From positions 124,001 to 188,000 of the IMG/VR virus record IMGVR_UViG_3300035703_000010: DNA of 64,000 bases; one strand, given 5' to 3'. The notes under the pieces were generated by a model, which had not been told where the DNA came from, did not search any database, and saw only the letters and a program-made list of their open reading frames with translations. Made by a program: the position numbers and the translations under genes. How positions within the stretch are numbered: position 1 is the stretch's first letter; each line of letters opens with the position of its first letter. Shown here piece after piece: positions 44,488 through 58,233 of the stretch.

Positions 44488-44531
44488 GTTATGTTTTTGT
44501 TTGTTCATCCTATTTATTAAAGGAGCGTATC

Positions 44532-44711: not shown

Positions 44712-45205
44712 TGTTGAAACGTGATGTGATTACAACTAAAATAGATTTAAAAGATTTTTTAAGCGGTGTAATTAAAGAATCTCTTCATTCAACGAAAAAA
44801 GTGATCAAAGAAGATGAAGAGAAAGAAGCTTTAAAAACTGGCGATGTGTCCGTAGAAGAAGTCATTGATAAGCTAAATACAATTAGAGCTGGAAAGTCTT
44901 TTAAAAGTGAAGAGATAAAATCTGCGATGGAATCTTATTTAAATGATTTAAATTCTGCAGAGAAAACAGCTTTATTTGCATTTCTAAAAGGAATTTCTCA
45001 AGTTGTTGGTGGCGAGGTTGAAGGAAGCAAAGCCGTAGAACCTCAAGATTCACCAGCAAATGTAAAAATGGAAAAGAAACCGTCTTCACAGAAAGTTACA
45101 GTTAAGCCAGTCGTAATTAAGAAACCAGAAGCGCAACCAGGTTCTGGCGCGAAAGGCAAAGAAGATACGACTCCTCCTGTGCCTATTGCACCCAAGAAAA
45201 AGTAA
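44708..45205 (+). CDS. Hypothetical protein with 'LKDFLSGVIKES' helix and a Pro/Lys-rich tail
   Basis: ORF in the operon. Confidence 0.6.
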   Translation: MMLKRDVITTKIDLKDFLSGVIKESLHSTKKVIKEDEEKEALKTGDVSVEEVIDKLNTIRAGKSFKSEEIKSAMESYLNDLNSAEKTALFAFLKGISQVVGGEVEGSKAVEPQDSPANVKMEKKPSSQKVTVKPVVIKKPEAQPGSGAKGKEDTTPPVPIAPKKK

Positions 45206-45227
45206 AGTCTAATAAACTTGGTGTATA

Positions 45228-45422
45228 TTGTTATACATGAATACCGATAGCACCAAGTTTATTAAACTTCCTAATGGAAACACGTTAGAAGTTTCTATTT
45301 TTCCAGGTTTTTTAGAAAAAGTTAAAGAACATTTTTCTTTGAGTAATGTCGAAGAAGTCAATGATGATCATGTTAGAATGTATATTTATGGTGCATTTAA
45401 AAGCGCATTAGATAAGCAATAG
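45228..45422 (+). CDS. Small hypothetical protein
   Basis: 64-aa ORF filling the gap, with native-looking composition. Confidence 0.55.
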   Translation: MLYMNTDSTKFIKLPNGNTLEVSIFPGFLEKVKEHFSLSNVEEVNDDHVRMYIYGAFKSALDKQ

Positions 45423-45442
45423 CATGAAAGGAATCATTATAC

Positions 45443-45730
45443 ATGACCACTCCGATGTTGCAAGAGCTGATAAAACTTATTATCTTACAAGAATCTCGGA
45501 TTAGAGAAGCTGAAATAACTGGTGATCGCAAGGTTCCATGGGGATCTGAAGATCACGTTTCTGACTTAGAGAATCGCTGCGCAAATGTTGAGTATTGGAG
45601 AAATAAGTACCCAAGAGGTTCTGCAAAAAGAGATCATTACGGTACAGTTCTCAAACACCTAAAAAATGAATTAAAATCTGCAAAGAAAGCTGCGCAACAT
45701 AGACAACTTCACGAAAAAGAAGAGGAATAA
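45443..45730 (+). CDS. Hypothetical protein with 'LQELIKLIILQE' N-terminus
   Basis: ORF in the operon. Confidence 0.55.
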   Translation: MTTPMLQELIKLIILQESRIREAEITGDRKVPWGSEDHVSDLENRCANVEYWRNKYPRGSAKRDHYGTVLKHLKNELKSAKKAAQHRQLHEKEEE

Positions 45731-45733
45731 ATC

Positions 45734-46966
45734 ATGGGTGGTGCCGTTGGGCATTTGCAGCACTTGTATGACGATCGTAATCTCACATTCGATGAGATAC
45801 AAGACATTCTTACTTCTGCCGCTACAGGCAAGCTTGAAAAAGTTTCAGAAAAGTTAGATGGATTAAACCTAGTTTTTTCTTGGGATGTTTCTTCAAATCT
45901 TTTAAAGGTTGCTAGGGCGGGAGGAGACATCAAGCGTGGAGGAATGGATGCAAAAGCATTAGCTTCTAAGTTTGCTGGAAGGGGTAATCTTACAGAGGCT
46001 TTTACTTTTGCATTTCATGTTCTAAATGAATCTCTTGTTGGATTGCCAAAAAAAGTAAAGTTGAAAATTTTTGGACCTCGCTCCAACAGATGGTATTCTG
46101 TTGAGATCATTTATGCAGCCAATCCTAACGTCATCAATTACAATTCTAACAACGTAGTGTTTCACAGATGGCCTGTATTTTCTGTTAGCAAAAGCGGAAA
46201 AGTGCAGATGACCACTGATGACCTTGGTGGCTTTGACCTTTTGACAAAACATATTGATAGAATGCAAAAGTCTATCAGCATGAAGGATTGGAACATTCAA
46301 GGTCCAACTTCTGTCAAACTTAAAAACTTTTCCAACTTAGCTTTTTTAAATAATGTTCTTGTAAAGATTAAAGATGAGTTATCTACGGTGGGATTATCAG
46401 GTAATTCTACGATTAGAGAATATCTAGGAGAAAAGATTAGACGTGATGCGGAACGTCTAAATCTTCAGCCTCACGTCGTTGGTATGTTGATTGAACGATG
46501 TCTTGCAGAACCTGGTTCTCCGACCCTTGTTCAAATTAAAAAAAATGCTAATAAATCAGACCATGATACAATCAACGATTTTGTTCGTAATTCTCTTGAA
46601 AGGATGAAGAGTTACGTGTTGCCAATTGAATTGGCTATCAACGATTTTGCTATTGAGCTTTTAAAAGGCCTTGAGTCAACGTTCGTTAATAACGCTGAAG
46701 AAGAAGTGTTACGACTACGTAATCAAGTTGCAAAAGCGATTTCTACTATCGAATCATCTGGTGATGAAACAGCCATGAGTATTTTAAAAAACCAGATGAA
46801 TAAATTGAAGTCGTTGGAAAATATCACATCACCAGTTGAGGGTGTAGTATTCATCTATAAAGGTAATGCATACAAATTTACAGGAAGTTTTAGTTCAGCG
46901 AATCAGATTTTAGGTCTATTCAAATATGGAAGAAAAGGTTCAGTCTTAAACCCTGAATCAATCTAA
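45734..46966 (+). CDS. RNA/DNA-ligase-like nucleotidyltransferase of large phages
   Basis: N-terminus MGGAVGHLQH, motif I EKLDG, and C-terminal EGVVF...YKFTG (ligase motifs IV/V-like). Confidence 0.6.
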   Translation: MGGAVGHLQHLYDDRNLTFDEIQDILTSAATGKLEKVSEKLDGLNLVFSWDVSSNLLKVARAGGDIKRGGMDAKALASKFAGRGNLTEAFTFAFHVLNESLVGLPKKVKLKIFGPRSNRWYSVEIIYAANPNVINYNSNNVVFHRWPVFSVSKSGKVQMTTDDLGGFDLLTKHIDRMQKSISMKDWNIQGPTSVKLKNFSNLAFLNNVLVKIKDELSTVGLSGNSTIREYLGEKIRRDAERLNLQPHVVGMLIERCLAEPGSPTLVQIKKNANKSDHDTINDFVRNSLERMKSYVLPIELAINDFAIELLKGLESTFVNNAEEEVLRLRNQVAKAISTIESSGDETAMSILKNQMNKLKSLENITSPVEGVVFIYKGNAYKFTGSFSSANQILGLFKYGRKGSVLNPESI

Positions 46967-46970
46967 AATG

Positions 46971-47951
46971 TCATCCCCAGGTTTCTTTCCCTGATCGTCC
47001 TTTAACAGGTACTTTAAACTTTGGTTTGCCTTGCGATATCCTGCTGAATTTTATTTTGTCTTTATACGGGCTTTTAATCATCATAAATCCTTCAGGGGTG
47101 ACTAAAATGATGCCTGTTAAATCAAATACATCTTCTGCTAAAATAGTTTTTTCCCATTGAGACTTTAAAATATCTGGATTTGAAAAAACAGGACTGTTTA
47201 GTATTGATAGAGCTGCAGCTATGCTTGAAACGTCGCCTAGTTTACTTGAAGCTTCATCTTCATCGATGCCTAACAATCTAAGTATTTTCAACATGTTCGT
47301 TGGAGCAACTTTATATGTTTTATCGTTTATTTTGACATTCATCACTTTGCTTTCTGCAATTTTGATTATGCTTGAAGCGGCCATAATGATTTTCATAATG
47401 TCATTGAAACGTGCAGCAGTTATCTCTCCGCTTTGTAACAAATCATAATTGCTTTTACCTGATTTTGTGACGGCGTCTTTCATAAAAGACACAATTTGAT
47501 TGTATTCTGATGACATTCCGTTACTTTTTACAATTTCTTCAATGCCTGGAAAATCTATGAATTCTTGTAATTCATCAAACGCTATTCTTAGAGTCTTATT
47601 TATAGCACCTACAGCTAGATTTCCTTCCGTACCAGGTCTAATTTCGCTGTCTTTATCAGGGGCTTTTACTTCCCATTTTCCGCTGAATGGACCATCTGGG
47701 ATGTCTAAATCATATGATTCTGATTGACCTTGTACTTTTCCGCCTAAAATATCAGCTAGGCGATTTTCACCTGGTCCAACGCCTGTTTCTCCACTCAGCG
47801 GAACATCACTAGGAAAATCAACCCATTTATTTAATTCATCAAATTTAGGAGCATTATTAGGAGACTGTTCAGTTAATTTTTTTTCGAAGATCATCTTAGA
47901 CAGCTCTTCATTTATTATGCTTCGTAATTCTTTAATACGCATCTTCATCAT
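46971..47951 (-). CDS. PD-(D/E)xK nuclease-like protein with 'IKELRSIINEE' N-terminus
   Basis: GVGPGE..L...GG...YDLDI...WEVK; upstream ATAATTA. Confidence 0.55.
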   Translation of the reverse strand: MMKMRIKELRSIINEELSKMIFEKKLTEQSPNNAPKFDELNKWVDFPSDVPLSGETGVGPGENRLADILGGKVQGQSESYDLDIPDGPFSGKWEVKAPDKDSEIRPGTEGNLAVGAINKTLRIAFDELQEFIDFPGIEEIVKSNGMSSEYNQIVSFMKDAVTKSGKSNYDLLQSGEITAARFNDIMKIIMAASSIIKIAESKVMNVKINDKTYKVAPTNMLKILRLLGIDEDEASSKLGDVSSIAAALSILNSPVFSNPDILKSQWEKTILAEDVFDLTGIILVTPEGFMMIKSPYKDKIKFSRISQGKPKFKVPVKGRSGKETWG

Positions 47952-48018
47952 CTTAATTATACTTCTTGCTTGAGTACGACACTGCGTATTTTCGATAAAA
48001 TAGGAATATTTTGACTTC

Positions 48019-48897
48019 CTACTTTACTTCAGGATCGCTACAACATCTAAATCCTTGCTGGTAAAACGTGTGTAATTCTCCATGAGTTCTAATTGAACTT
48101 CTACATTGGGCTTTGGTACCAGACCAATATCCTCCTTTTAATATCGACCGGTATTTGTTTGAAATTGACGTCACAGTCCATTCTTCAACGTTTCCTATCA
48201 TGTCATGAACGTTGAATGGGCTTGCACACTTAGTTCGTGATCCTGAAAGATACCCTTGCCATAAGTGGTTTAACTCTATGCCACTTTTCATCGTTCCCCT
48301 TGGGAACATTAATCTATTATCATAAGCCTTCCATGGTTTGTCGATATTGCAACTTTCAGCATCTCGAATGTATCCATTCGGAAAAGGTAACATTTCTTCA
48401 CCTTCGCATGCAAATGTCCATTCGTCTTCTGAACACAATCTTTTTCCTTTTAATTCGCACAATTCTTTTGATTCTTCCCATGTTGTCATAACCCATGGCG
48501 CTGCACCGTCACGGTTTGGCCATTCGTATGGGTCGATACAAAAATGCATATCTTTTCTAGGAAGATCTTTTTTTATTTTTTCCCATTTTGCTTGATCAAA
48601 TTCAAGACAATATTCTTTTTTTTCTGACCATTTTTTACATGTAGATTTTTGCAAATTTTCTATATTGTCATATGAAAATGGATTGGAATCACGGGTTATT
48701 CCCATTTTTCCTTTAATTTCTATCATATCATTTCCAGGACAATTTTGTGAACCTTCATGAACAATTCCTGGATCTTTTTCAGCAATCCAGTATTTCTTAT
48801 CGATAAACTTCCAATTTATAATGTTTGATTCGATTCGAGGGCAGTTTTCTGTGCATTCTGCAAATAGAAGTTGTGATAGAACAATAACAAAATTCAT
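48019..48897 (-). CDS. Formylglycine-generating-enzyme (FGE-sulfatase/SUMF1) fold protein, exported
   Basis: FCIDPYEWP, RLCSEDEWTFAC, DMIGNVEEW, LKGGYW, GFRCC; hydrophobic N-terminus. Confidence 0.88.
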   Translation of the reverse strand: MNFVIVLSQLLFAECTENCPRIESNIINWKFIDKKYWIAEKDPGIVHEGSQNCPGNDMIEIKGKMGITRDSNPFSYDNIENLQKSTCKKWSEKKEYCLEFDQAKWEKIKKDLPRKDMHFCIDPYEWPNRDGAAPWVMTTWEESKELCELKGKRLCSEDEWTFACEGEEMLPFPNGYIRDAESCNIDKPWKAYDNRLMFPRGTMKSGIELNHLWQGYLSGSRTKCASPFNVHDMIGNVEEWTVTSISNKYRSILKGGYWSGTKAQCRSSIRTHGELHTFYQQGFRCCSDPEVK

Positions 48898-48901
48898 AGC
48901 T

Positions 48902-49159
48902 TTATTTTTTTACGTTATCGACCATACTGTACGGCACCCATCCCATTTCAGAATTACCTGTTAGGATTTTTATCCAAACTTGTGCGCCATGCCCTAGTCG
49001 TGATTCAATAATTATACCAATTTGGCCAGGTTCTAAATTTTCTATTCTAGAAAAAACGTATCCTGGTCCTATTCTCAGGACAACAGGAAATTTTCTTTTA
49101 GGTAAGATTACGATTAAGTCGCCTATGTCAAATTTTTTATCAAAAGATTCATCATTCAC
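48902..49159 (-). CDS. Small SH3/KOW-like protein
   Basis: FDIGDLIV...GIIIE...KILT....GWV. Confidence 0.55.
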   Translation of the reverse strand: MNDESFDKKFDIGDLIVILPKRKFPVVLRIGPGYVFSRIENLEPGQIGIIIESRLGHGAQVWIKILTGNSEMGWVPYSMVDNVKK

Positions 49160-49719
49160 ATTATAATTTCATCTACACAACCCCACTTTAGGGAGTCTTT
49201 AGCACTTAAATACCAGTCTTTCTTTTTGTTGTAGACTTTTTGTAGTTTTTCTTTAGTAATTTTTGTGCTTTCTAATGTCATCTCTTCAATTTTCTTTTGA
49301 AGTCGTTTTGTTTCAATGACATCCTCTTCTATTTCCTTTAGCTTCCCCCAGGCGGCAGAGCTAACTTGATGATACATCATTGTACCATGTTTATGAATAG
49401 AACGATGGTCACCATGGATCGCTATCATAAATCCGCAAGACATAGCGCAACCAGTCACCACGGTGTTAACAGGTGTTCCTTTATCTTTCATAATTGAAAG
49501 AAGTCCAAAGCATTGATAAACAGCCCCACCATATGAATCGATGTGAATTACGATGGGCTTTGGTTCATAAGATATTCCGTATATTGGATAAAACTTTTTT
49601 AGAAATTCGTCATGTTGCCTGATTTCTAAAATGCTTTTTGAAAGTTGATTCATCGAATCTTGATCGACTTGTTGCGCAAGGAAAAGACTGCGTGGAAATG
49701 GTTTTTCTAAATCAGCCAT
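49156..49719 (-). CDS. clpP: ClpP-like serine protease subunit
   Basis: IHIDSYGG, AMSCG (Ser), MYHQ (His), DWYLSAKDSLKWGCVDEI. Confidence 0.85.
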   Translation of the reverse strand: MADLEKPFPRSLFLAQQVDQDSMNQLSKSILEIRQHDEFLKKFYPIYGISYEPKPIVIHIDSYGGAVYQCFGLLSIMKDKGTPVNTVVTGCAMSCGFMIAIHGDHRSIHKHGTMMYHQVSSAAWGKLKEIEEDVIETKRLQKKIEEMTLESTKITKEKLQKVYNKKKDWYLSAKDSLKWGCVDEIIM

Positions 49720-49756
49720 AATAAAATAACGTACTATACTATTTGATAGTTGTATA

Positions 49757-50047
49757 TTACGCTATTAAGCTGCTAAGGTATTTTGCACTAACCCAGCCTA
49801 CTATGTTTCTTTCAGTGCATATCTTTGCGCCGACGGATCCTTTTAAGGGGCTATAAATTTCTAAAAGAACAGCAATTTCATTTTTATTAAATTTGCCAAT
49901 AATTTTAGGCCAAAAATTTTCAAATAATTCTTCATGGCCTTCCCAAGTTTCCCAGATGGCTAATCCATTAGGCTGTCCAAAATCGACTAGAACGACAAGA
50001 TCGCCTGGATTTAATAGATTTTCGTTTATTGAATTAAACTTCTTTAT
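49757..50047 (-). CDS. SH3-like 96-aa ORF lacking an ATG/GTG/TTG start (not in ORF track)
   Basis: Translated by hand: IKKFNSINENLLNPGDLVVL...GWVSAKYLSSLIA*. Similar layout to 48902..49159. Confidence 0.5.
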   Translation of the reverse strand: MKKFNSINENLLNPGDLVVLVDFGQPNGLAIWETWEGHEELFENFWPKIIGKFNKNEIAVLLEIYSPLKGSVGAKICTERNIVGWVSAKYLSSLIA

Positions 50048-50210
50048 ATTCTTCTATTTCCTTATCTTGTTCTAGGTTGTCTAATTCTATGATTAATTTA
50101 ATTAATTCTTGAACTTCTTGAGAACAGTCTTTGCCAATACTTCGCAAGTGTCGAATGAGATCATTTAATTGATTGATCTCTTCGACAAGAGATTCGCGTT
50201 TGCTCGTCAT
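50034..50210 (-). CDS. Small helical hypothetical protein, 58 aa (not in ORF track)
   Basis: MTSKRESLVEEINQLNDLIRHLRSIG...EEYKEV*; RBS-like AGGT upstream. Confidence 0.55.
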   Translation of the reverse strand: MTSKRESLVEEINQLNDLIRHLRSIGKDCSQEVQELIKLIIELDNLEQDKEIEEYKEV

Positions 50211-50416
50211 AACGTTACCTACGCGATTTTAAATATCAAGTAAGTTTGATAAAAACAAAAAATAAAAAAGAGCAAAAAAGTTGCAATGTATAAGATACAT
50301 TATCTTATATGCAGCAATTTGCCCTAGAGATATTAAAAAAAGTTTTAGACTTTTTCTGGAAATTTCTCTTTTTTTCTGGATTTCTTGTTAAGTTTTTTGA
50401 TTTTTTATACCTTTAA

Positions 50417-50668
50417 TCAATCGTCTAAACAAATATTAGAATCAAGTTCATGATACGTTTGATCGCTTTGCAAGATTTCTTGCAGGCTTACTTTTTTAGT
50501 TTCATCTTTAGAAAAGTAGCAAGATCCTTCTTCTAATTCATTAATTTTTTCTTCGAAAAGAGATAATTGATTTTGTGGTTCATCATAAGAAACGTTCTTC
50601 ATTTTAGGAACGTTGGGTAAGATGCAAATTGCGAAAGATGCTACGTATAAAACTTTTAAAATTTGCAT
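50417..50668 (-). CDS. Hypothetical protein with hydrophobic N-terminus
   Basis: Starts 1 nt after the aceA stop. Confidence 0.5.
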   Translation of the reverse strand: MQILKVLYVASFAICILPNVPKMKNVSYDEPQNQLSLFEEKINELEEGSCYFSKDETKKVSLQEILQSDQTYHELDSNICLDD

Positions 50669-50669
50669 A

Positions 50670-51920
50670 TCAACCCTTATTGATAAATTGTTGCATTTCA
50701 GTTGAATGTTCTAACGCTAGAGTTGATGAAGTTCCTCCTGAAATTACTTTTGATACTTCATCAAAGTAACCTGTTCCAACTTCTCTTTGATGCTTTGTTG
50801 CAGTATATCCAAATTCCTCTGAAGCAAATTCAGCTTGTTGCAATTCAGAATAAGCCGCCATACCATGATCGCGATACTTTCTTGCTAACTCAAACATTCC
50901 ATGATTCAATGAATGGAAGCCTGCCAAAGTAACGAATTGGAACTTGTAACCCATAGCGCCAAGTTCTCTCTGAAACTTTGCAATTGTCGTATCATCAAGC
51001 TTCTTCTTCCAGTTGAATGACGGTGAACAATTGTATGCAAGAGGCTTACCTGGGAATTTTGCATGGATGCCTTCTGCAAATGTTTTAGCCTCTTCAAGAT
51101 CTGGTGTTGACGTTTCCATCCAGATCATATCTGCATAAGGCGCGTATGCAAGCCCTCTAGCAATAGAACGCTCCATTCCTGTCCTACATAGGTAATGGAA
51201 TCCTTCTGGAGTTCTCTTTCCAGATTCGATGTAATCGTGATCATATGGATCAACGTCGCTAGTGATAAGATTTGCCGATTCAGCATCTGTTCTAGCAATG
51301 ATAATCGTTGGAACATCCATGACGTCAGCAGCAAGACGAGCTGCAGTTAGTGTGCGAATAAATTGAGATGTTGGGACAAGAACCTTTCCTCCTAAATGAC
51401 CACATTTCTTTTCTGATGCAAGTTGATCTTCCCAATGAACGGCTGCTGCACCTGCTTCAATCATCGCTTTCATTAATTCAAAAGCATTAAGAGGACCTCC
51501 AAAACCAGCTTCTGCATCAGCTACGATAGGAGCCATCCAGTGTTTATCATTATTCGGATTTTCAGCATGATCAATTTGTTCTGCGCGTAACAATGCATTA
51601 TTGATTCTTTTAACGATTGCTGGTACGCTGTTTGCTGGATAAAGACTTTGGTCAGGATATGTGTTTCCAGAAAGATTTGCGTCAGCTGCGACCTGCCACC
51701 CAGATAGATAGATAGCTTCTAGACCTGCTTTAACTTGCTGTACGGCCATAGCTCCAGTCGACGCTCCAAGAGCATTGATATATGGTTTTTCGTTAATTAG
51801 CTTCCATAATCTTTCAGCTCCAAGCCGAGCAATAGTATGTTCTACCTTAGTTTTTCCTCTAAGTTTTTCAACGTCTGCTTGAGTATAAAGTTTTTTAATA
51901 TTCGCAAATCTGTCATCCAT
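50670..51920 (-). CDS. aceA: Isocitrate lyase
   Basis: [67 protein letters not shown]; RBS AGGTGA. Confidence 0.97.
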
Positions 51921-51984
51921 AAGTCACCTATAAAAGAATGTGGGAATAAATCTATCTACTTCATTAAAAGTTTTTACAAGTTTT

Positions 51985-52638
51985 TTAACTTTTTATTAGG
52001 ACTTGACGAACATATTTGCGGATCAATGATTCACCAATAATGTCATTCTTTAATATATCGAATATTTCATTGCCATGTTTTTGAATTGACTTTGGCAAAA
52101 AAGAAATGAATAGTTCTTTATTGTCATTTTCTTCTTCGACATCATCTTCGTCGTCAAATTCATTTTCATCTTCTTCAGCTGCATCTTCTAAGAAATCTCT
52201 CATTTGAGTTCCACTGATGTCAATCGTTTCTTGCCTGCTGATGCCTCTTGGAATAATCTGGCCATTCTTTAATAAATTTGGTGCAGATTCAATTAAGCTT
52301 TTTTCATTATAATTTCTGATGATGTCTTCATCATCAGAATAAATTGTGTACACATCTGTTGATGCTTCAGATTCAGCACGTTCTAATTCATTATAAACTT
52401 TTGCGACAGGAGAAGTACGATCATAATCTGGCGTTACGTTACTAGGTAACGTATCTTGAATATACGTTAACCAAATGTACAGCATCGTATCTCCACTTAT
52501 TCCTATGTCATCTTCTCTTCTATCTGCAGTAGAAACATATAATTTAACTTGATCATTTTCTTTTGCTGCAATTCTAACGAGCATATCATGACCAGCATGG
52601 TATGGTTTTGCAGCCATTGGAACTAAACCTATTTTCAT
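51985..52638 (-). CDS. HIGH-superfamily nucleotidyltransferase (phage cytidylyltransferase-like)
   Basis: KPYHAGH, ISGTQMR; C-terminal IIGESLIRKYVRQVL helix. Confidence 0.75.
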   Translation of the reverse strand: MKIGLVPMAAKPYHAGHDMLVRIAAKENDQVKLYVSTADRREDDIGISGDTMLYIWLTYIQDTLPSNVTPDYDRTSPVAKVYNELERAESEASTDVYTIYSDDEDIIRNYNEKSLIESAPNLLKNGQIIPRGISRQETIDISGTQMRDFLEDAAEEDENEFDDEDDVEEENDNKELFISFLPKSIQKHGNEIFDILKNDIIGESLIRKYVRQVLIKS

Positions 52639-52677
52639 AATCCTATATTTATCCTGAAATAATAATAAGTTTATGTT

Positions 52678-53100
52678 ATGTTAAAAACCGTAATATCATG
52701 CGGAGCAGTTGTTTATAAAAAAGAGGAAGAAAAAACTTACGTTCTTCTTGTAAAACAATCTGGACCGGTTCCTGGGTGGGGAATTCCTAAGGGACATATG
52801 GAACCAGGGGAAACTTACATAAAAACAGCGATTAGAGAAGTAAAAGAAGAGACAGGAGCAGACGTAAAAATTTTGACGAGACTTCCTCACGTCGTTTTAG
52901 AAAAAAGGAACTATAGAAAAATCGTTATTCCTTACTTGGCAATTCAAGCAAAAAATTCAATTCCTCGTTGCGATCATAAAATGAGTGAAGTTGTTGATGT
53001 AAAGTGGTTTGATATCGAAAATCTTCCTCAAATATATTCTTATCAAAAGCCAATCATCGATGCAGCAATGCTTATTTTGGGAGGATACCTCGATGGATAA
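52678..53100 (+). CDS. Nudix hydrolase
   Basis: Nudix box GHMEPGETYIKTAIREVKEETG. Confidence 0.92.
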   Translation: MLKTVISCGAVVYKKEEEKTYVLLVKQSGPVPGWGIPKGHMEPGETYIKTAIREVKEETGADVKILTRLPHVVLEKRNYRKIVIPYLAIQAKNSIPRCDHKMSEVVDVKWFDIENLPQIYSYQKPIIDAAMLILGGYLDG

Positions 53101-53326
53101 AAGAATTTTAGATGAAGCCATTGAAGCTGTGTCTTCATACGTTGGAAAAACAGATAATTGGATTATTATAAAAAAAGAGCTTTTAAAGTCGTTGTCTTCT
53201 CAAGATAGAATGTATTTTTCCACGAGAGACCCTATCACAAAAAAGCAGTCTATGAATGACTTTGAAAAAATTGTGGCAGAAAAATGGTATAAAAAAACAG
53301 GAATACGTCCTATACTTATCGAATGA
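53093..53326 (+). CDS. Small hypothetical protein
   Basis: ATG at 53093 after GGAGG. Confidence 0.55.
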   Translation: MDKRILDEAIEAVSSYVGKTDNWIIIKKELLKSLSSQDRMYFSTRDPITKKQSMNDFEKIVAEKWYKKTGIRPILIE

Positions 53327-53327
53327 A

Positions 53328-54260
53328 ATGAATGTCCAAGAAAAAATTATAAGAGAGTTTATAAGAGAATCTTTGCTTTCTAATGAAATTATTGTTGAAA
53401 GCTCTTTTACTTCTGGCGTGAAATCTGCTGTTTCAGATTTGGGGAAAGTCGTTGCTGGATCTGCTGCAACTATATTAGCTTCAGTGAAACAATTAACAGG
53501 TTTAACGTATCAAGCTATAAAAGAAGTAGGTTCGTTGGGGATATTTAAAGCTGACTACGATAAAGTAAAAAGTCAATATCACCAAAACTTGGCAGAGATA
53601 CAAAAAGAATATGGAGCTGAAATTGATGCAGCTGAAAAAACTTTTTCAAAAGCCTTGTTCCCTTTAACTTCTGCAGCAAAAATAGGATTAGGAGCAACAG
53701 CTACAGCATTTTTCTTTGCAAACCCATTAGCGTTTATTGCCTTAGAAGGCACGGCTACTGGAACATCTAAAAAAATAAAAGGTGAAGTTGTGCCAAAGAT
53801 TAAAGATCTAAAATCTCAGGCACAAAAAGCCATTGATAAGTGGTCTGGTTATGAAGAACAAAGTGAAACTAAAAATAAAGGTAATGACCTTTTAAGACAA
53901 GATTGGGTAAGAGAAGGACAACAAAAGTTTAAACAATCTACAGAGTTGTATTTTAAACAAATAAATGATAAGATTAAAAAAATTTCATCTGCTGCAGATG
54001 TTAAAAGTCTTGGAATTCCTGATAAGATAGTTCAGCAGCTTTCGAAAGATTCAAAAAATCAAGCGGAAATATTAAAAGCTTGTAAAGCTTTAGCATTGAA
54101 TGAAATTCTTAATACTGTAAAAGTCGACAAAGAAAAACAAATAGCTGATGCAAAAAAAGCTAACGTTCCTGAGTCTGCAATAACTGGATCTAAAAGTTTC
54201 ATTAAATTATACGATAAGATCATAGTGACAATTAACGAAAAAATTTCATCATTAAAATGA
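53328..54260 (+). CDS. Hypothetical protein with 'IIREFIRESLL' N-terminus
   Basis: ATG at 53328; ATACTTA at 53312. Confidence 0.6.
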   Translation: MNVQEKIIREFIRESLLSNEIIVESSFTSGVKSAVSDLGKVVAGSAATILASVKQLTGLTYQAIKEVGSLGIFKADYDKVKSQYHQNLAEIQKEYGAEIDAAEKTFSKALFPLTSAAKIGLGATATAFFFANPLAFIALEGTATGTSKKIKGEVVPKIKDLKSQAQKAIDKWSGYEEQSETKNKGNDLLRQDWVREGQQKFKQSTELYFKQINDKIKKISSAADVKSLGIPDKIVQQLSKDSKNQAEILKACKALALNEILNTVKVDKEKQIADAKKANVPESAITGSKSFIKLYDKIIVTINEKISSLK

Positions 54261-54302
54261 AATGTTCTAAACATGTGATCGACATCTTGTATAGTTTACA
54301 TT

Positions 54303-54608
54303 ATGCCGAAACGACAACAAAAAAGTTATAATGTTGATTTGATGCAGCCAGATGAACTAGGTGAAGTCAAAAAACTTGTAAAAGAGTTCGTGTCTAGAAT
54401 TGAAAACGTTGATAATGAAATTGAACTCTTAAAGCAAGATAGAAAAGAAATTATTGAAGAATATTCTACAAAGTTAGACTTAAAAGTACTCCAAGCTGCA
54501 ATGAGGGTTGTTAAGATTAAGCAAGGAGTCGCTCATAAAGATACGTTTGATCTCTTTTTGGAAGTTTTAGACCCAGAATTGGGATCATCATCAGAAGGTG
54601 ATACATGA
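54303..54608 (+). CDS. GapR / T4 DsbA-like DNA-binding protein
   Basis: VKEFVSRIENVDNEIELLKQDRKEIIEE...DLKVLQAAMR pattern. Confidence 0.65.
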   Translation: MPKRQQKSYNVDLMQPDELGEVKKLVKEFVSRIENVDNEIELLKQDRKEIIEEYSTKLDLKVLQAAMRVVKIKQGVAHKDTFDLFLEVLDPELGSSSEGDT

Positions 54609-54988
54609 GTAAATCTCCTAAAAAAACGCAACCTCAGCAGGAAGTCGAATTGAAGCCAAAGAAAAGTTTTTCTTTAAAGCTTTCCAAGCAAGAGCTTGTT
54701 CACTTGCGAGATTTATTTGGTGTGATGCTACCTGCAGACATGAAGTCAACAGTCAGTCAATCTCTTGCTTCTAGCCAGGATAGACAATTGGTCGAATCAA
54801 AGCTCTGGAATAAGGTTATTTCTTTATGTTCTGAGGCTGAAATTCCAATGGGAGAATATGCTCCTGATTTCGTCATAAGCATATCTGCTCCACCTCAACT
54901 TAATGTTTTTGAAATGATTTCTGACGATGAAGCCGTGGCTGCTACAGTAGTTCAACAGATGTTAGAAGAAGATGATTCGGAGGAGTAA
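54605..54988 (+). CDS. Hypothetical protein
   Basis: ORF in the operon. Confidence 0.55.
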   Translation: MSKSPKKTQPQQEVELKPKKSFSLKLSKQELVHLRDLFGVMLPADMKSTVSQSLASSQDRQLVESKLWNKVISLCSEAEIPMGEYAPDFVISISAPPQLNVFEMISDDEAVAATVVQQMLEEDDSEE

Positions 54989-55401
54989 TGAAGTACTCTA
55001 TAGGTCAAGTCTTATATGTTTTGATGAACCGTGAAACAAAAATTTGTCCAGTTCAAGTCGTAGAAGAAATTACTAAAAAGAGTTTAAACGGAGAAACTAC
55101 AAATTACGTTGTTCGTACAGGAGCTAAGGGAGAAACTATTTCTTTGTCTGATTTAGACGGACAAATATTTGATTCGATAGATACATTGAAGCAAACTTTA
55201 CATGAAAAAGTAGTAAAGATGATTGATATTGTAGTAGAAAATTCAGAAAAAAGAGCAAAACAGTGGTTCTTCAATGAAGAGAAAAGTCTTGAAACTAATG
55301 TTGAAGAGATTCAAAACACATCAACGAATACTGATGATGCAATCGTAATTTTGCCTGATGGAACAAAAGCAAAAGTAAAAATACCTCTTTCGGGAACATG
55401 A
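54988..55401 (+). CDS. Hypothetical protein with KOW-like N-terminus
   Basis: YSIGQVLYV...; coupled to the upstream stop. Confidence 0.55.
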   Translation: MKYSIGQVLYVLMNRETKICPVQVVEEITKKSLNGETTNYVVRTGAKGETISLSDLDGQIFDSIDTLKQTLHEKVVKMIDIVVENSEKRAKQWFFNEEKSLETNVEEIQNTSTNTDDAIVILPDGTKAKVKIPLSGT

Positions 55402-55404
55402 TCT

Positions 55405-55671
55405 ATGATAGAGCAAAGAAGTGATGAATACGATAATGTCTATAAGACATTAAATGAAATTAAGAAAAAACTGACGGAGTTATCACTTACTGATTTATCA
55501 AAAATTCATGTAGGCATTGAATGGACATGGATGCCTTATGTAAAAGATCATATAGATTTTTTGATAGAGCAAACAGACGGAATATTACAAAACATTCATG
55601 ATTCTCCGCCTCCTGTAGCTAAAAATATCGATGCTGCAATCGATAACGATAATTTATCGATGAATGAATGA
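55405..55671 (+). CDS. Hypothetical protein
   Basis: ORF in the operon. Confidence 0.5.
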   Translation: MIEQRSDEYDNVYKTLNEIKKKLTELSLTDLSKIHVGIEWTWMPYVKDHIDFLIEQTDGILQNIHDSPPPVAKNIDAAIDNDNLSMNE

Positions 55672-55701
55672 AAAATCCATCACCTATGTGTTATCATATA
55701 G

Positions 55702-56286
55702 GTGATGGACTCGTTAGAAATCAAGCATGATCAAGAAAGCCCTTATTCTCTATGGGCTAGAAACGTTATTGATGAATTTAAAAACCTGACAAATGATGAA
55801 ATTTGTAAGCGAATTCAAGAACGTTCAAACGGATTTGCTGTTCTTATGACACATGTTAATGGAGACTTTAACATTGGAACAGTTCTAAGGTCTGCAAACT
55901 CGCATGGAGTTAAAGACTTTTTCTACTATGGTCGTAAGAAATTTGATCGTAGAGGATGTGTAGGGGTTCATAACTATACTCAAATGCAATTTTTAAGAGA
56001 TCTTGATGAAGTTATCAAGATCAAAAACGACTATTGTTTTGTCGCTTTAGAGAACAATATTGATGGTGTCGTATCATTACCAGATTTTGATTGGAATTTA
56101 AGTAAACCACCTTGCATTATCGTAGGAGAAGAATGCAACGGTATTCCAAAAGAAATTCTTGATCTTTGTGATGCGTTTGTAGAAATTCCTAGTTTTGGAT
56201 CTGTAAGAAGCATGAATGTCGGTTCTGCTTCTTCAATTGCGATGTATGATTATGTAAGTAAAAAACGAAAGATTAAATCTCAGTAG
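55702..56286 (+). CDS. SpoU/TrmH-family (SPOUT) RNA 2'-O-methyltransferase
   Basis: NIGTVLRSA, IVGEECNGI, VEIPSFGSVRSMNVGSA..IAMY. Confidence 0.9.
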   Translation: MMDSLEIKHDQESPYSLWARNVIDEFKNLTNDEICKRIQERSNGFAVLMTHVNGDFNIGTVLRSANSHGVKDFFYYGRKKFDRRGCVGVHNYTQMQFLRDLDEVIKIKNDYCFVALENNIDGVVSLPDFDWNLSKPPCIIVGEECNGIPKEILDLCDAFVEIPSFGSVRSMNVGSASSIAMYDYVSKKRKIKSQ

Positions 56287-56311
56287 TTTAAACGTACTAA
56301 AAAACTGATTT

Positions 56312-57055
56312 TTATTTATCAAGAAATTTTCTTGTTACGCTAGGAAAATTTTTCTCAGCATATAAAATCCATGAATTTCTAATGTCTTCAATTGTTTTGT
56401 CAATCATTTGTTGATCATTTATCCCATGATTGATGAATGATCTTTCAATTTTTTGTAACATTTCATCTATGATCTCATAAAATGATTTTTTTTGTTTCTT
56501 TGACTGTTGTCTTGCTCCGGCAACAAATGCTGGTATTTCAGAAGGATCAGTATAGTATTTTTTCTTTTTTTCTATGTCTTTTTTATCTTGCATCATTTCA
56601 TATCCTGTCTGTATCGAAGAAACAGCTAATTCAGGACCTTGAGATGAATGTTCTAATTCATGTCTGATAGCGTTGTGTAGGTAAGGCTGAATCATTCTTA
56701 GATGAATAGGCATGAGCATTCCAGTAGTTGATTGAACCGTGATTGAAATGTTCAATTCATTTAATTGCCAGTCCCATGATGCTTCTGCTAAAGCTTTATC
56801 GTTCTTAGTATGAAGAACTTTAACGATCATACTTAATGAAATTTTTTCAGAAGTCTGTGGTGCAATATCATTGCTTATTTCTATAAGAAATTTTGCAATT
56901 CTAACAATGAAATTTCCTTCTTTCATTCTTGGAAGATCATTGATTTTTTCAATAGAAGAAGCAAGTTTCTTCATTGCAATTCTACTGATCTTGCTAGCAA
57001 GAGAATCAAGCTTCGACTCTAAAAGTAAACGTCTAATTATCGACTCATAAATCAT
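56312..57055 (-). CDS. Zincin-like (HExxH) protein with 'IIRRLLLE' N-terminus
   Basis: RHELEH plus a downstream YY..PSEIPAF; ATATTTA just upstream of the ATG at 57055. Confidence 0.6.
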   Translation of the reverse strand: MIYESIIRRLLLESKLDSLASKISRIAMKKLASSIEKINDLPRMKEGNFIVRIAKFLIEISNDIAPQTSEKISLSMIVKVLHTKNDKALAEASWDWQLNELNISITVQSTTGMLMPIHLRMIQPYLHNAIRHELEHSSQGPELAVSSIQTGYEMMQDKKDIEKKKKYYTDPSEIPAFVAGARQQSKKQKKSFYEIIDEMLQKIERSFINHGINDQQMIDKTIEDIRNSWILYAEKNFPSVTRKFLDK

Positions 57056-57118
57056 AAAGTAAATATTTGTTGAAATGCTATAATGCAATTTTTATTGTCT
57101 ATGTAATATGATTGTTTA

Positions 57119-57808
57119 ATGAGCAAAACATTACTTTCAAGAATTTCTGCATCTATGTTGAAAGACGGATTGTCTCCAACATTAGAGATGATATCATACG
57201 CATTAGTTTGTGATGAATACGCAGCAGGAGTTGCCGATGAAGATCAATTACAGTTTGCTATGTGCAATTATCTCGATCAATCAGCAAGAAGATCAAGATC
57301 GCTTTCAGAAGTAATCAATAGAGTTAAAGAACCTCCTATTTCAGAGATTTTTACTGAATGCACGATCATGATGGTTGATGCGGTTATCAGATCACCAAAA
57401 TTTATTCATAGATCACTTCACGTTTCATCAGAAAATAATATCAAAATAGGGGATGGGAAATACATCAAACCAGATGTAGCAATTTGGAATGACGATAAGA
57501 TAATTGGAGTGATTGAATGTAAGACTAGTTTAGGAAGAGCTAGGAAAGAATGGAAAAATGATTTTGAACAAAGAGTTGAGATTTTTAAAGGAGTTGGCAT
57601 TAAGCCTGACTCGGTGTTCTTTGTAGTTGCAACAGAAAATTCTTGGCAAGGTTTTCCAGCAGATGATCCAAATACATTAAATTCGTGGTTTTCCTTATGC
57701 CCTAAAGGAACTTGGTTCGGAGGAGGAAAGCAAGGTGAACTTAAACTTTCAGATAAAATGAATCAAGGATGCTTGAAAAAATTAATTCAAAAATTAGAAA
57801 ATCTATGA
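57119..57808 (+). CDS. Restriction-endonuclease-like PD-(D/E)xK protein
   Basis: IKPDVAIW...VIECKTSL. Confidence 0.6.
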   Translation: MSKTLLSRISASMLKDGLSPTLEMISYALVCDEYAAGVADEDQLQFAMCNYLDQSARRSRSLSEVINRVKEPPISEIFTECTIMMVDAVIRSPKFIHRSLHVSSENNIKIGDGKYIKPDVAIWNDDKIIGVIECKTSLGRARKEWKNDFEQRVEIFKGVGIKPDSVFFVVATENSWQGFPADDPNTLNSWFSLCPKGTWFGGGKQGELKLSDKMNQGCLKKLIQKLENL

Positions 57809-58174
57809 TTTTTTGTCTTCAAACGTATCACGTTCATCTGGTCTTTTAGACAATTTTTTATCTGATTCTTGTTCTTTTCTTTCTTCGTCTTGAAACTTAT
57901 CTTGAGCTCTCTGTAGCTTTGAAGACATATTGATATAATCGTACATTCTTCTTATGCTGATTCCAAGGGTTTTTGCAGCTTCTCTTGCATTACCATCAGA
58001 AGCTGCAAGAGCTTTCATTGCATCAGCAATTGCATCTGATCTTTCTATTTTATATTCTGCGCCGAATTTAGTTAGACCACCACCTGGCTTATCATCTTCA
58101 TTTAATAAAGATTCTTTTACAAATTCTCTAATGAGAACCTTTAAATTTGATAGTGTTCTTTTATTGCTCATCAT
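57803..58174 (-). CDS. Fis-type HTH protein with 'LKVLIREFVKESLL' N-terminus
   Basis: ALAASDGNAREAAKTLGISIRRMYDYI matches the Fis/HTH_8 pattern GN..+AA..LGIS...LY. Confidence 0.65.
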   Translation of the reverse strand: MMSNKRTLSNLKVLIREFVKESLLNEDDKPGGGLTKFGAEYKIERSDAIADAMKALAASDGNAREAAKTLGISIRRMYDYINMSSKLQRAQDKFQDEERKEQESDKKLSKRPDERDTFEDKKS

Positions 58175-58233
58175 TTTTATTCATGATAATTATCTATCGA
58201 TAGCCTTTTTTAAACTACTCGATACATATTACC

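What the first reader, a model, noticed from the sequence alone, without database searches (positions are those of the whole stretch)
50670..51920. Intact isocitrate lyase in a phage genome
A full-length short-type AceA with the KKCGH catalytic loop, good RBS and phage genes on both sides, so not a host contig edge. The glyoxylate shunt bypasses the CO2-releasing TCA steps and lets cells build sugars and nucleotides from acetyl-CoA or lipid. For a phage that needs dNTPs and possibly NDP-sugars for DNA glycosylation, this could redirect carbon in starved hosts. Central-carbon AMGs of this kind are better known to me from eukaryotic giant viruses than from phages; I cannot confirm novelty. No malate synthase is in the window.
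Basis: partly seen in the sequence, partly recalled or inferred. Interest (0 to 1): 0.7.

Follow-up and report, generated by a model that had tools for sequence, protein, structure and literature searches.

The report
Isocitrate lyase gene in jumbo phage
A large freshwater/subsurface phage really does carry an intact, strongly conserved gene for isocitrate lyase (the first enzyme of the carbon-saving glyoxylate shunt) without the second enzyme, but phage genes of this kind have already been reported, so it is a solid example of a known phenomenon, not a discovery.

Summary
Window 50670-51920 (-) is a 416-aa ORF that passes NCBIfam's isocitrate lyase equivalog cut-off (740 vs 562 bits). It has the KKCGH loop and every conserved ICL motif, and matches solved bacterial ICLs end to end (667 bits).

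It lies in a 204.6-kb IMG/VR virus record with portal, major head protein, three tail-sheath paralogues, DNA polymerase and RNR, so this is a jumbo tailed phage. It is not a chimera: four independent viral contigs keep the ICL in the same syntenic slot, and contigs from three other studies bridge both junctions at about 99% identity.

The gene is ameliorated (GC3 0.26 vs genome median 0.24) and under very strong purifying selection (dN/dS about 0.025, rank 2 of 97 shared genes). Its closest relatives form an all-viral/metagenomic clade; the best cellular ICLs are at most 74% identical, so the donor is unresolved. No malate synthase, AceK or ICDH is in this record or its 211-kb relative.

Novelty is low. 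aceA/aceB were found in ocean viromes (2013), an aceBA operon in a complete viral genome (2017), and 98 ICL genes in huge phages, mostly without malate synthase (2025 preprint).

New here: the lineage also carries a PrkA/YeaG-YeaH-YcgB module, which adjoins aceA-aceB in a relative.

The parts
50670..51920 (-). Isocitrate lyase (aceA-type, 416 aa), the finding itself
   Evidence: ORF. NCBIfam ICL equivalog 740 bits vs cut-off 562. 667 bits to solved ICL 6lrp over residues 3-412. All motifs invariant in 14 viral ICLs. dN/dS 0.025.
51924..51929 (-). Shine-Dalgarno-like AGGTGA, 3 nt upstream of the ICL ATG, inside a 64-nt AT-rich intergenic spacer
   Evidence: Read directly from the sequence. No promoter call above chance.
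50417..50668 (-). 83-aa ORF with a hydrophobic N-terminus. Its ATG lies 1 nt after the ICL stop (TGAtATG), so it is probably translationally coupled. Function unknown.
   Evidence: No Pfam or PHROG hit. Weak homologues directly after the ICL in L006 (58%) and L010 (35%).
50034..50210 (-). 58-aa ORF conserved between ICL and ClpP in relatives; function unknown
   Evidence: Homologues in L005, L006, L007, L008 and L010 between ICL and ClpP (33-84% identity).
49156..49719 (-). ClpP-family protease (187 aa), the most constant neighbour of the ICL across related and distant ICL-bearing phages
   Evidence: Pfam CLP_protease 82.8 bits. Adjacent to or near the ICL in L004-L012, L051, L015, L021, L025 and L078.
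48902..49159 (-). 85-aa ORF of the same minus-strand cassette; function unknown
   Evidence: Conserved next to ClpP in L006, L010 and L012 (46-49% identity).
48019..48897 (-). FGE-sulfatase (formylglycine-generating enzyme-like) domain protein, 292 aa, same cassette
   Evidence: Pfam PF03781 53 bits. Conserved in L006, L010 and L078.
46971..47951 (-). 326-aa ORF, the last (most downstream) gene of the minus-strand cassette; no family match
   Evidence: Homologue in L006 at 54% identity.
51985..52638 (-). 217-aa nucleotidyltransferase-like protein (HxGH-type N-terminus; weak NMNAT / citrate-lyase-ligase-like hits) immediately upstream of the ICL
   Evidence: Pfam PF08218 21.8 bits over residues 5-41 and phrog_3462 NMNAT 22.9 bits. 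Conserved upstream of the ICL in L006 and L010 (52-57% identity).
52678..53100 (+). NUDIX hydrolase (140 aa), divergently transcribed from the cassette
   Evidence: Pfam NUDIX 74 bits. 72-79% identity in L006 and L010.

Best explanation
Window 50670-51920 encodes a catalytically competent, Mg2+-dependent isocitrate lyase that a lineage of jumbo tailed phages from freshwater, groundwater and subsurface habitats has carried for a long time as an auxiliary metabolic gene.

Shown:
- The protein is an ICL by curated-model score and by every conserved motif.
- The gene sits in a real phage genome, in a conserved minus-strand cassette, in the same slot in independently assembled relatives.
- It has the phage's own codon usage.
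- It is among the most strongly constrained genes of the genome.

Inferred:
- During infection the phage-made enzyme cleaves host isocitrate into succinate and glyoxylate. This pulls flux away from isocitrate dehydrogenase at the TCA branch point.
- The lineage has no malate synthase, so the host's own AceB/GlcB is presumed to condense glyoxylate with acetyl-CoA to malate.
- That avoids the two CO2-releasing steps and keeps C2-derived carbon available for oxaloacetate, PEP, and sugar, amino-acid and nucleotide precursors in slow-growing, carbon-poor cells. Succinate meanwhile feeds respiration.
- Supplying only the first committed, flux-controlling enzyme fits the usual AMG logic. It also fits this phage's heavy investment in nucleotide metabolism.
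For: - Identity: NF011645 740 bits vs cut-off 562 and TIGR01346 563 vs 276. 667 and 636 bits to solved ICLs 6lrp and 7cmx over essentially the whole length. [39 protein letters not shown] and TLAGFH are all invariant in 14 viral ICLs. KKCGH is the motif essential for ICL function, whereas PrpB has KRCGH (PMC12088919, PMC11982470).
- Phage context: portal, major head protein, three sheath paralogues and SbcC. DnaB, RNR, DNA polymerase and tail fibres. RecA, gp32, ThyX, Tmk and IMPDH/GMP reductase.
- Not chimeric: L006, L009, L010 and L012 are collinear over about 20 kb with the ICL in the same slot. Contigs from three other studies bridge both junctions at about 99% identity. The region is held in runs from at least 5 studies.
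- Long residence and selection: ICL is 91.7% identical between G000 and G001 against a median of 77% (rank 12 of 133). dN/dS is 0.025, rank 2 of 97, with saturated dS like the rest of the genome. GC3 is 0.262 against a genome median of 0.242, while the nearest cellular ICLs are mostly 0.52-0.94.
- All-viral clade: 25 rows with no cellular member; the 14-row subclade has 100% support.
- ICL-only: no PF01274 in G000, G001, G002 or G003. No AceK or ICDH.
- Literature: most ICL-bearing huge phages (76 of 98) lack malate synthase.
Against: - No enzymatic, expression or flux data exist. The only RNA evidence is a few 151-nt contigs in one aquaculture metatranscriptome, and DNA carry-over is not excluded.
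- The host is unknown, so it is not known whether it has a malate synthase.
- CheckV rates the record about 60% complete, so an aceB on a missing part cannot be strictly excluded. The same holds for the 211-kb relative, rated 65%.
- dS is saturated, so the dN/dS value is approximate.
- ICL has a much weaker affinity for isocitrate than ICDH in model bacteria (own knowledge). Extra ICL alone may therefore shift little flux unless ICDH is also restrained.
Confidence: 0.6

Rival explanations
1. ICL works alone, not as part of a shunt. The phage wants the two products themselves: succinate to feed succinate dehydrogenase and respiration, and glyoxylate as a precursor (for example transaminated to glycine for purine and one-carbon metabolism). 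Malate synthase is therefore dispensable.
For: - No malate synthase anywhere in the window's clade, and 76 of 98 ICL-bearing huge phages lack it.
- The same window carries IMPDH/GMP reductase, ThyX, a ThyA-like enzyme, Tmk and RNR. That is strong investment in nucleotide supply.
Against: - No glyoxylate aminotransferase, glyoxylate reductase or glycine-pathway gene was found among the ORFs scanned, though only part of the genome was scanned against Pfam.
- Free glyoxylate is reactive, and most bacteria with ICL also have AceB/GlcB (own knowledge).
- More distant viral ICLs are paired with malate synthase, which points to the shunt as the ancestral role.
Confidence: 0.2
2. The ICL is one arm of a phage-borne starvation-physiology toolkit and is functionally tied to the phage's own PrkA/YeaG-YeaH(DUF444)-YcgB(SpoVR) module. 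The module would phosphorylate or proteolytically control isocitrate lyase (host or phage copy), giving the phage control of the isocitrate branch point in nutrient-starved cells.
For: - G000 encodes DUF444 (360 bits), SpoVR (382 bits) and PrkA (455+270 bits) at G000 198083-202525.
- PrkA is present only in the window's ICL lineage (G000, G001, L015's record) among 11 ICL-bearing viral records.
- In L015 the order is GS-like, ICL, malate synthase, DUF444, SpoVR, PrkA on one strand. In L202 and L203 the ICL lies about 2 kb upstream of DUF444.
- E. coli YeaG phosphorylates AceA in vitro, and only with malate present (PMC8055822).
Against: - The PrkA trio is on at least 175 viral contigs, and only 3 of 80 sampled loci have an ICL within 10 kb. 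The module is therefore a lineage trait largely independent of ICL.
- In G000 and G001 the two are 25 and 58 kb apart.
- The E. coli YeaG-dependent sites T3 and S398 do not exist in the phage ICL: the N-terminal 15 residues are absent and S398 aligns with K376.
- PrkA's biochemical function is disputed between kinase and ATP-dependent protease (PMC9512850).
Confidence: 0.1
3. The enzyme's main role is 2-methylisocitrate lyase activity: detoxifying propionate-derived intermediates, not running the glyoxylate shunt.
For: Bacterial ICLs can have secondary 2-methylisocitrate lyase activity (P. aeruginosa AceA, PMC11982470).
Against: - It scores 103 and 78 bits on the PrpB equivalogs against cut-offs of 354 and 353, but 740 on the ICL equivalog.
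- It has KKCGH, not the PrpB motif KRCGH.
- No methylcitrate-cycle genes were seen nearby.
Confidence: 0.05
4. Artefact or passenger: the ICL is host DNA mis-joined to a phage contig, or a recently captured gene with no function for the phage.
For: - The record is a linear metagenome-assembled contig rated about 60% complete.
- A close relative was binned into a 'Chlamydiae bacterium' MAG.
Against: - The same slot is occupied in four independent syntenic contigs.
- Junction-bridging contigs come from three other studies.
- Codon usage and GC3 are typical of the phage.
- dS is saturated and dN/dS is 0.025.
- The 'Chlamydiae' contig itself carries the phage cassette and mostly unannotated small ORFs.
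Confidence: 0.02

Closest known systems
Bacterial isocitrate lyase AceA / ICL1 (EC 4.1.3.1; solved structures 6lrp, 7cmx, 3e5b, 1f61, 1igw)
   Same: Same length class (about 410-435 aa) and the same motifs, including the KKCGH catalytic loop. Alignable end to end at 558-667 bits. 64% identical to Salmonella AceA.
   Different: - Encoded by a phage.
- Lacks the 15-25 N-terminal residues of the bacterial enzymes.
- The window's subclade has W163 in HWEDQ where other ICLs have F.
- No aceB or aceK partner genes.
ICL genes of huge phages (Huge Phage Genome Collection preprint, bioRxiv 10.1101/2025.02.27.640493)
   Same: Phages of 200 kb or more from freshwater and subsurface habitats that carry ICL, mostly without malate synthase (98 ICL and 22 MS genes; MS only in marine, soil and plant habitats). 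This window fits that description exactly.
   Different: I could not check whether this very genome is in their table, because the stored supplement is truncated. The preprint reports occurrence only. It gives no selection, synteny, donor phylogeny or PrkA association.
aceBA operon of the marine T4-like environmental viral genome TARA_ERS478052_N000008 (Nishimura et al. 2017, PMC5332604), and aceAB reads in Pacific Ocean viromes (Hurwitz et al. 2013, PMC4053976)
   Same: A virus-encoded glyoxylate-shunt enzyme interpreted as an AMG. Comparable aceB-aceA pairs are seen here in L021, L025, L047, L016 and L015.
   Different: Those viruses carry both enzymes; the window's clade carries ICL only. 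Their ICLs fall in different parts of the tree.
Phage C48C1 (OQ984149.1, Kyanoviridae, 156 kb, complete)
   Same: The only bona fide phage record in the INPHARED set with a full-length ICL (55% identity).
   Different: A different phage family with no shared synteny. The gene is annotated only as hypothetical protein. It sits on a long branch in the tree, and the record has no PrkA.
E. coli YeaG(PrkA)-YeaH-YcgB starvation module and its reported substrate AceA (Sultan et al. 2021, PMC8055822)
   Same: The phage has all three module genes plus an AceA homologue. In relative L015 they form one co-directional cluster with aceB.
   Different: There is no evidence that the phage proteins interact, and the E. 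coli phosphosites are not conserved. The module is far more widespread in this phage group than the ICL.

Membership tests
Isocitrate lyase (AceA; NCBIfam NF011645 / TIGR01346; Pfam PF00463) | Whole-protein score above the curated equivalog cut-off | tested here: met
   NF011645 740.4 bits vs 562. TIGR01346 563.1 vs 275.9. PF00463 336 vs 26.
Isocitrate lyase (AceA) | KKCGH catalytic loop with the active-site cysteine | tested here: met
   K171 K172 C173 G174 H175, invariant in 14 viral ICLs and aligned to KKCGH of solved ICLs. The motif's essentiality is per PMC12088919.
Isocitrate lyase (AceA) | Conserved Mg2+/substrate-binding motifs of the ICL/PEP-mutase barrel ([33 protein letters not shown]) | tested here: met
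   All are present and invariant and identical to 6lrp and 7cmx in the printed alignments. Assigning individual residues to metal or substrate contacts rests on my own knowledge of the M. tuberculosis ICL1 structure; it was not tested here.
Isocitrate lyase (AceA) | Full length, including the C-terminal segment that closes the neighbouring subunit's active site | tested here: met
   The alignment reaches residue 412 of 416 and the last residues of the PDB chains. The STE..QF C-terminal motif is invariant.
Isocitrate lyase (AceA) | Cleaves isocitrate to succinate + glyoxylate | not testable with these tools
   Needs an enzyme assay or complementation of an aceA mutant.
2-Methylisocitrate lyase (PrpB) | Score above the PrpB equivalog cut-off; KRCGH loop | tested here: not met
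   TIGR02317 103.5 vs 354.4. NF008455 77.9 vs 353. The loop is KKCGH, not KRCGH.
Virus-encoded auxiliary metabolic gene (AMG) | Located inside a bona fide viral genome with viral genes on both sides, not at a contig edge | tested here: met
   The ICL is at G000 174670-175920 of 204,651 bp. Hallmark genes; viral genes on both flanks.
Virus-encoded auxiliary metabolic gene (AMG) | Conserved in related viruses and under purifying selection; independent of one assembly | tested here: met
   Synteny, RBH rank, dN/dS 0.025, independent contigs from other studies.
Virus-encoded auxiliary metabolic gene (AMG) | Expressed during infection and changes host metabolism | tested here: inconclusive
   Only a few near-identical 151-nt contigs in one metatranscriptome. 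DNA carry-over is not excluded, and there are no flux data.
Complete viral glyoxylate shunt (aceBA operon type) | Malate synthase encoded next to or with the ICL | tested here: not met
   PF01274 is absent from G000, G001, G002 and G003. It is present next to the ICL in G004, G005, G006, L015 and L021. Caveat: G000 is rated about 60% complete.

The most novel reading that the evidence does not exclude
This phage lineage carries isocitrate lyase together with its own PrkA/YeaG-YeaH-YcgB module. In some relatives (L015, L202, L203) these genes are physically clustered with aceA, and in L015 also with aceB and a glutamine-synthetase-like gene. E. coli YeaG has been reported to phosphorylate AceA in a malate-dependent way. 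The most novel reading not excluded is that the phage brings both the branch-point enzyme and its regulator. That would make a self-contained, phage-encoded controller of the TCA/glyoxylate branch point for infecting starved cells. The phage ICL's missing N-terminal extension, which holds the E. coli T3 phosphosite, might then make it insensitive to the host's own control.
Probability: 0.1. Interest if true: 0.65.

Novelty: new member of a known kind. Interest (0 to 1): 0.3.

Why it matters
Phage-encoded glyoxylate-shunt genes bear on how viruses reprogramme carbon flow in nutrient-poor waters. They affect how much carbon infected cells respire as CO2 and how much they keep as biomass and virions.

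This locus is a clean, well-supported example. The gene is intact, resident in the lineage for a long time, and one of the most constrained genes of the phage. It therefore makes a good candidate for the first biochemical and physiological characterisation of a phage ICL; I found no such characterisation in the searchable literature.

The unsolved question is why most huge phages carry ICL without malate synthase. The association with a PrkA/YeaG starvation module is a new, testable lead on that question. As an observation, however, it extends what three earlier studies already reported.

Tried and rejected
- PHROGs scan of the ICL: no family at all. PHROGs v4 simply lacks it, and this says nothing about function.
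- Megablast of window 40000-60000 against 50,697 phage records: no match. There is no cultured or deposited close relative.
- In the 'phages' tblastn, the Salmonella, Escherichia and Acinetobacter 'phage' hits are bacterial contigs or fragments. I disregarded them as evidence for phage ICL.
- Promoter/terminator scan of 46500-53500: 21 promoter-like sites against 26 expected, and 1 terminator-like site against 4.5 expected. No usable signal, so the cassette's transcription unit is undefined.
- Terminal repeats and tRNAs in G000: none. Completeness could not be settled. G000 and G001 are collinear over about 110 kb but each has about 70-100 kb without a counterpart.
The tree is a quick LG+G4 search with weak basal support (67-85). 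The Bacteriovoracaceae contig L118 is really bacterial, but its placement near the deep viral ICLs is too weak to call it the donor.
- The 'Chlamydiae bacterium' label on P0080 was rejected as a host or donor clue: the contig is a related phage.
- Supplementary Table 10 of the huge-phage preprint: not found in the truncated stored file.
- Glutamine synthetase, AceK and ICDH in G000 and G001: absent.
- Structure prediction and fold search: not run, because a 667-bit full-length match to solved ICLs makes them uninformative.
- Complex prediction for PrkA + ICL: not run. The pair exceeds the size limit uncut, kinase-substrate contacts are transient, and my report does not claim binding.
- Searches were input slips (a reference that was too short; a stop codon inside a reference). 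One search was a server failure that I repeated.
Full report
**1. The observation.** Window 50670..51920 (minus strand) is an uninterrupted 416-codon ORF starting with ATG. An AGGTGA Shine-Dalgarno-like element lies at 51929-51924, 3 nt before the start, in a 64-nt AT-rich spacer. Pfam assigns the protein to the ICL family (336 bits). NCBIfam's isocitrate lyase equivalogs are passed comfortably (NF011645 740.4 bits vs cut-off 562; TIGR01346 563 vs 276). The methylisocitrate lyase equivalogs are far below threshold (103 vs 354; 78 vs 353). Against the PDB it aligns from residue 3 to 412 with solved bacterial ICLs at 667 bits (6lrp) and 636 bits (7cmx), and at 558-611 bits with the other short bacterial ICL chains listed, among them 3e5b, 1f61 and 1igw.

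**2. Is the enzyme intact?** I aligned 14 viral ICLs spanning 57-93% identity to the window protein. The following are all invariant: SGW (73-75), YPDQSLY (88-94), DAEAGFGG (135-142), EDQ (164-166), KKCGH (171-175), ARTDA (209-213), NCSPSFNW (297-304), TLAG(F)H (331-336) and the C-terminal STE..QF. KKCGH is the motif regarded as essential for ICL function, and it distinguishes ICL from PrpB, which has KRCGH (PMC12088919, PMC11982470). Compared with Salmonella AceA (64% identity) and the PDB chains, the phage enzymes lack the first 15-25 residues but keep the C-terminus. The window's subclade has W163 (HWEDQ) where other ICLs have F. I attach no functional meaning to that.

**3. Is it a phage, and is the linkage real?** The window is bases 124001-188000 of a 204,651-bp IMG/VR virus record (G000) that is linear and rated about 60% complete by CheckV.
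- Outside the window, the record encodes a portal protein, a major head protein, three tail-sheath paralogues and an SbcC-like nuclease.
- Inside the window are DnaB, class I RNR, a split DNA polymerase, collagen-like tail fibres, RecA, a gp32-like SSB, a 5'-3' exonuclease, ThyX, thymidylate kinase, a ThyA-like enzyme and IMPDH/GMP reductase.
- My ORF set covers 97% of the record (a rough upper bound, since kept ORFs may overlap) and shows long co-directional gene runs.

Four independently assembled IMG/VR contigs are collinear with the window for about 20 kb: L006 from a 211-kb contig, L009, L010 and L012. They carry the ICL in the same slot at 77-92% identity, while most neighbours are 33-89% identical. 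The 8-kb region is held at 57-81% of sampled 31-mers in freshwater, aquatic and unspecified metagenome runs of three other studies, and at lower shares in several further studies, groundwater and lake water among them; the likely source is a subsurface metagenome. Contigs of three of those studies bridge both ICL junctions at about 99% identity: X2 record 3 (49475-50756), X6 record 29 (49995-50799), X6 record 30 (50770-52023), X5 record 20 (50449-50799) and X5 record 23 (51874-52821). A chimeric assembly is therefore excluded as far as sequence data allow. A close relative labelled 'Chlamydiae bacterium' MAG (P0080) sits on a contig with the same FGE-sulfatase/ClpP cassette and many small unannotated ORFs. 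It is a mis-binned phage contig, not a donor.

**4. Residence time and selection.** G000 and its 211-kb relative G001 share 133 reciprocal best hits with a median identity of 77%. The ICL is 91.7% identical, rank 12, alongside DnaB and the DNA polymerase. Nei-Gojobori dN/dS for the ICL is 0.025 (dN 0.067, dS 2.65), the second lowest of 97 genes (median 0.11). Synonymous sites are saturated, as they are genome-wide (median dS 1.54). The gene has therefore diverged together with the genome and was not recently exchanged; the exact ratio is approximate. ICL GC3 is 0.262 against a genome median of 0.242 (sd 0.067), and its synonymous codon usage is typical (rank 77 of 138). Five of the six cellular ICLs I checked (four of them among the closest found) have GC3 of 0.52-0.94.

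**5. Relatives and donor.** The large protein search returned 119 further sequences at 76-98% identity. All are metagenomic, and several sit on 190-280-kb contigs. IMG/VR holds 54 ICL loci. The best cellular ICLs in one-genome-per-species GTDB are at most 74% identical and come from many phyla, including Acidobacteriota, Myxococcota, Bacillota, Chloroflexota and Actinomycetota. A quick ML tree of 134 sequences gave the following:
- The window's ICL falls in a 25-row clade with no cellular member. It consists of a 14-row subclade (100% support), a sister 10-row subclade (98%) and L015.
- That clade branches outside all sampled cellular groups, with only 83-85% support at its base. The donor is unresolved.
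- Viral ICLs occur in at least three further places: a deep group (L047, L025, L030, with Phage C48C1 and L017 nearby); 19 contigs sister to a betaproteobacterial MAG; and single contigs next to Brevibacillus and Arenimonas that may be bacterial.
- Two GVMAG giant-virus contigs sit on long branches.

Viruses have thus acquired ICL several times.

**6. Malate synthase and other partners.**
- PF01274 is absent from G000 and from the clade members G001, G002 and G003.
- It lies directly beside the ICL in the more distant G004, G005 and G006, in L021 and in L015.
- A 316-kb, 91%-complete record of the betaproteobacteria-like group (G009) is also ICL-only.
- AceK, ICDH and glutamine synthetase are absent from G000 and G001.

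**7. The local cassette.** The ICL lies in a minus-strand island (46971-52638) within a mostly plus-strand region. Its gene order is:
- nucleotidyltransferase-like protein (217 aa; weak NMNAT-type hits)
- ICL
- 83-aa ORF (start 1 nt after the ICL stop)
- 58-aa ORF
- ClpP-family protease
- 85-aa ORF
- FGE-sulfatase-like protein
- 326-aa ORF

A NUDIX hydrolase is transcribed divergently. The cassette is conserved in L006 and L010. In rearranged relatives (L004, L005, L007, L008, L051) the ICL-58aa-ClpP core stays together, and ClpP-like genes are also near the ICL in the distant L015, L021 and L025. Promoter and terminator scans gave nothing above chance.

**8. How it most likely works.**
- Shown: an intact ICL, fixed in and constrained by a jumbo-phage lineage.
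- Inferred (ICL/ICDH branch-point biochemistry from established knowledge of E. coli): phage-made ICL diverts isocitrate to succinate + glyoxylate. The host's malate synthase completes the bypass. This saves two carbons per turn and feeds oxaloacetate, PEP and gluconeogenic and nucleotide precursors in carbon-poor, slowly growing cells, while succinate supports respiration.
- This phage invests heavily in nucleotide metabolism and also has two NDP-sugar epimerase/dehydratases.
- Main rival: the products are wanted for themselves, with no shunt involved. It is favoured by the clade-wide lack of malate synthase and weakened by the aceB pairing in other viral lineages.

**9. A lead beyond the finding.** G000 also encodes a complete DUF444(YeaH)-SpoVR(YcgB)-PrkA(YeaG) module at G000 198083-202525.
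- Among 11 ICL-bearing viral records, PrkA occurs only in the window's ICL lineage.
- In L015 the genes run on one strand in this order: GS-like, ICL, malate synthase, DUF444, SpoVR, PrkA, trypsin-like protease, PP-loop ATPase, ClpP.
- In L202 and L203 (the latter from a 361-kb contig) the ICL lies about 2 kb upstream of DUF444.
- Sultan et al. [quoted passage not shown]

Against a specific link:
- The trio is on at least 175 viral contigs, and only 3 of 80 sampled loci have an ICL within 10 kb.
- The E. coli sites T3 and S398 are not conserved in the phage ICL.
- PrkA has also been described as an ATP-dependent protease (PMC9512850).

I rate a functional ICL-PrkA connection at about 10%.

**10. 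Comparison with what is known, and novelty.**
- aceA and aceB were found in Pacific Ocean viromes (PMC4053976).
- An aceBA operon was described in a complete 179-kb T4-like marine viral genome (PMC5332604).
[quoted passage not shown] Malate synthase appears only in the last three habitats.
- Giant-virus ICL and MS expression has also been reported (PMC9270025).
- GenBank's Phage C48C1 carries an unannotated ICL.

An ICL-only huge phage from freshwater or subsurface is thus exactly a known kind. I found no experimental characterisation of any phage ICL.

**Verdict.** Interest is 0.3, with a modest upside from the PrkA association.

Noticed in passing
window 25199-26203 (+): A 334-aa ORF matches Pfam 'Volactin' (PF25216) at 226 bits, E 1e-66, over its full length, with weak Salactin and MreB hits. 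This is an actin-like protein encoded by the jumbo phage, 94.6% identical in the 211-kb relative and with the lowest dN/dS of all shared genes (0.021). It could be a phage cytoskeletal element.
   Followed up: partly
G000:C1:198083-202525 (outside the window; loci L175, L176, L075): A complete DUF444(YeaH)-SpoVR(YcgB)-PrkA(YeaG) starvation-type module. Homologues at 63-95% identity are on at least 175 IMG/VR contigs with the trio almost always intact. Known phages (Thermus phiYS40/TMA, Ralstonia RsoM2USA, 600-kb huge phages) have only 27-34% identical PrkA.
   Followed up: yes
L015:727-12155 (IMGVR_UViG_3300010883_025179): A single-strand cluster: GS-like, ICL, malate synthase, DUF444, SpoVR, PrkA, trypsin-like protease, PP-loop ATPase, ClpP-like. 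L021 has ClpP, amidase, GS-like, malate synthase, ICL. Carbon- and nitrogen-starvation genes recur together in divergent viral contigs.
   Followed up: partly
window 14926-15585, 36480-37481, 15582-16178, 23241-24317, 11975-14554: Dense nucleotide-metabolism load: ThyX and a separate ThyA-like enzyme (possibly a dNMP hydroxymethylase-type enzyme), thymidylate kinase, IMPDH/GMP reductase and class I RNR. Two NAD-dependent NDP-sugar epimerase/dehydratases lie at 32753-33772 and 35515-36483. This is compatible with modified or glycosylated DNA but was not tested.
   Followed up: no
window 26312-29005 and 29923-31206: The DNA polymerase (phrog_405) is split into two ORFs that match consecutive parts of the profile (39-716 and 714-1029). 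They are separated by a 320-aa ORF (28992-29954) with no family match. That ORF could be an intervening mobile element or an intein/intron-like insertion.
   Followed up: no
G000:C1:102281-111697 (loci L066, L065, L064): Three tandem paralogues of about 1,016-1,039 aa each, all with a C-terminal tail-sheath domain (phrog_23). This is an unusual triplication of a very long sheath protein.
   Followed up: no
G000:C1:192910-194550 (-), locus L180: A GroEL-type chaperonin (Cpn60_TCP1, 227 bits) encoded by the phage. An ATP-dependent DNA ligase (21-947) and a GT2 + methyltransferase fusion (202695-203999) sit at the record's ends.
   Followed up: no
P0080 / L078-L080 (JGI 3300020183, 3300020578, 3300020204): A 79%-identical ICL deposited in NCBI as 'MAG: Chlamydiae bacterium' lies on a 46-kb contig with the phage's FGE-sulfatase/ClpP cassette and many unannotated small ORFs. 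This is probably a phage contig mis-binned into a MAG, and at most a weak host hint.
   Followed up: partly
window 51985-52638 (-) and 52678-53100 (+): A divergent pair directly upstream of the ICL, conserved in relatives: an HxGH-type nucleotidyltransferase-like protein (weak NMNAT-like hits, with an acidic C-terminal region) and a NUDIX hydrolase. It is reminiscent of phage NAD-salvage NMNAT/Nudix pairs, but the scores are weak.
   Followed up: no
L118:1281-2922 (Bacteriovoracaceae MAG JAXLVO010000002.1): The malate synthase upstream of the bacterial ICL is split into two overlapping ORFs (317 and 261 aa), either a frameshift or an assembly error. This low-GC bacterial aceBA is the only cellular sequence near the deep viral ICL groups in the tree, with weak support.
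   Followed up: partly
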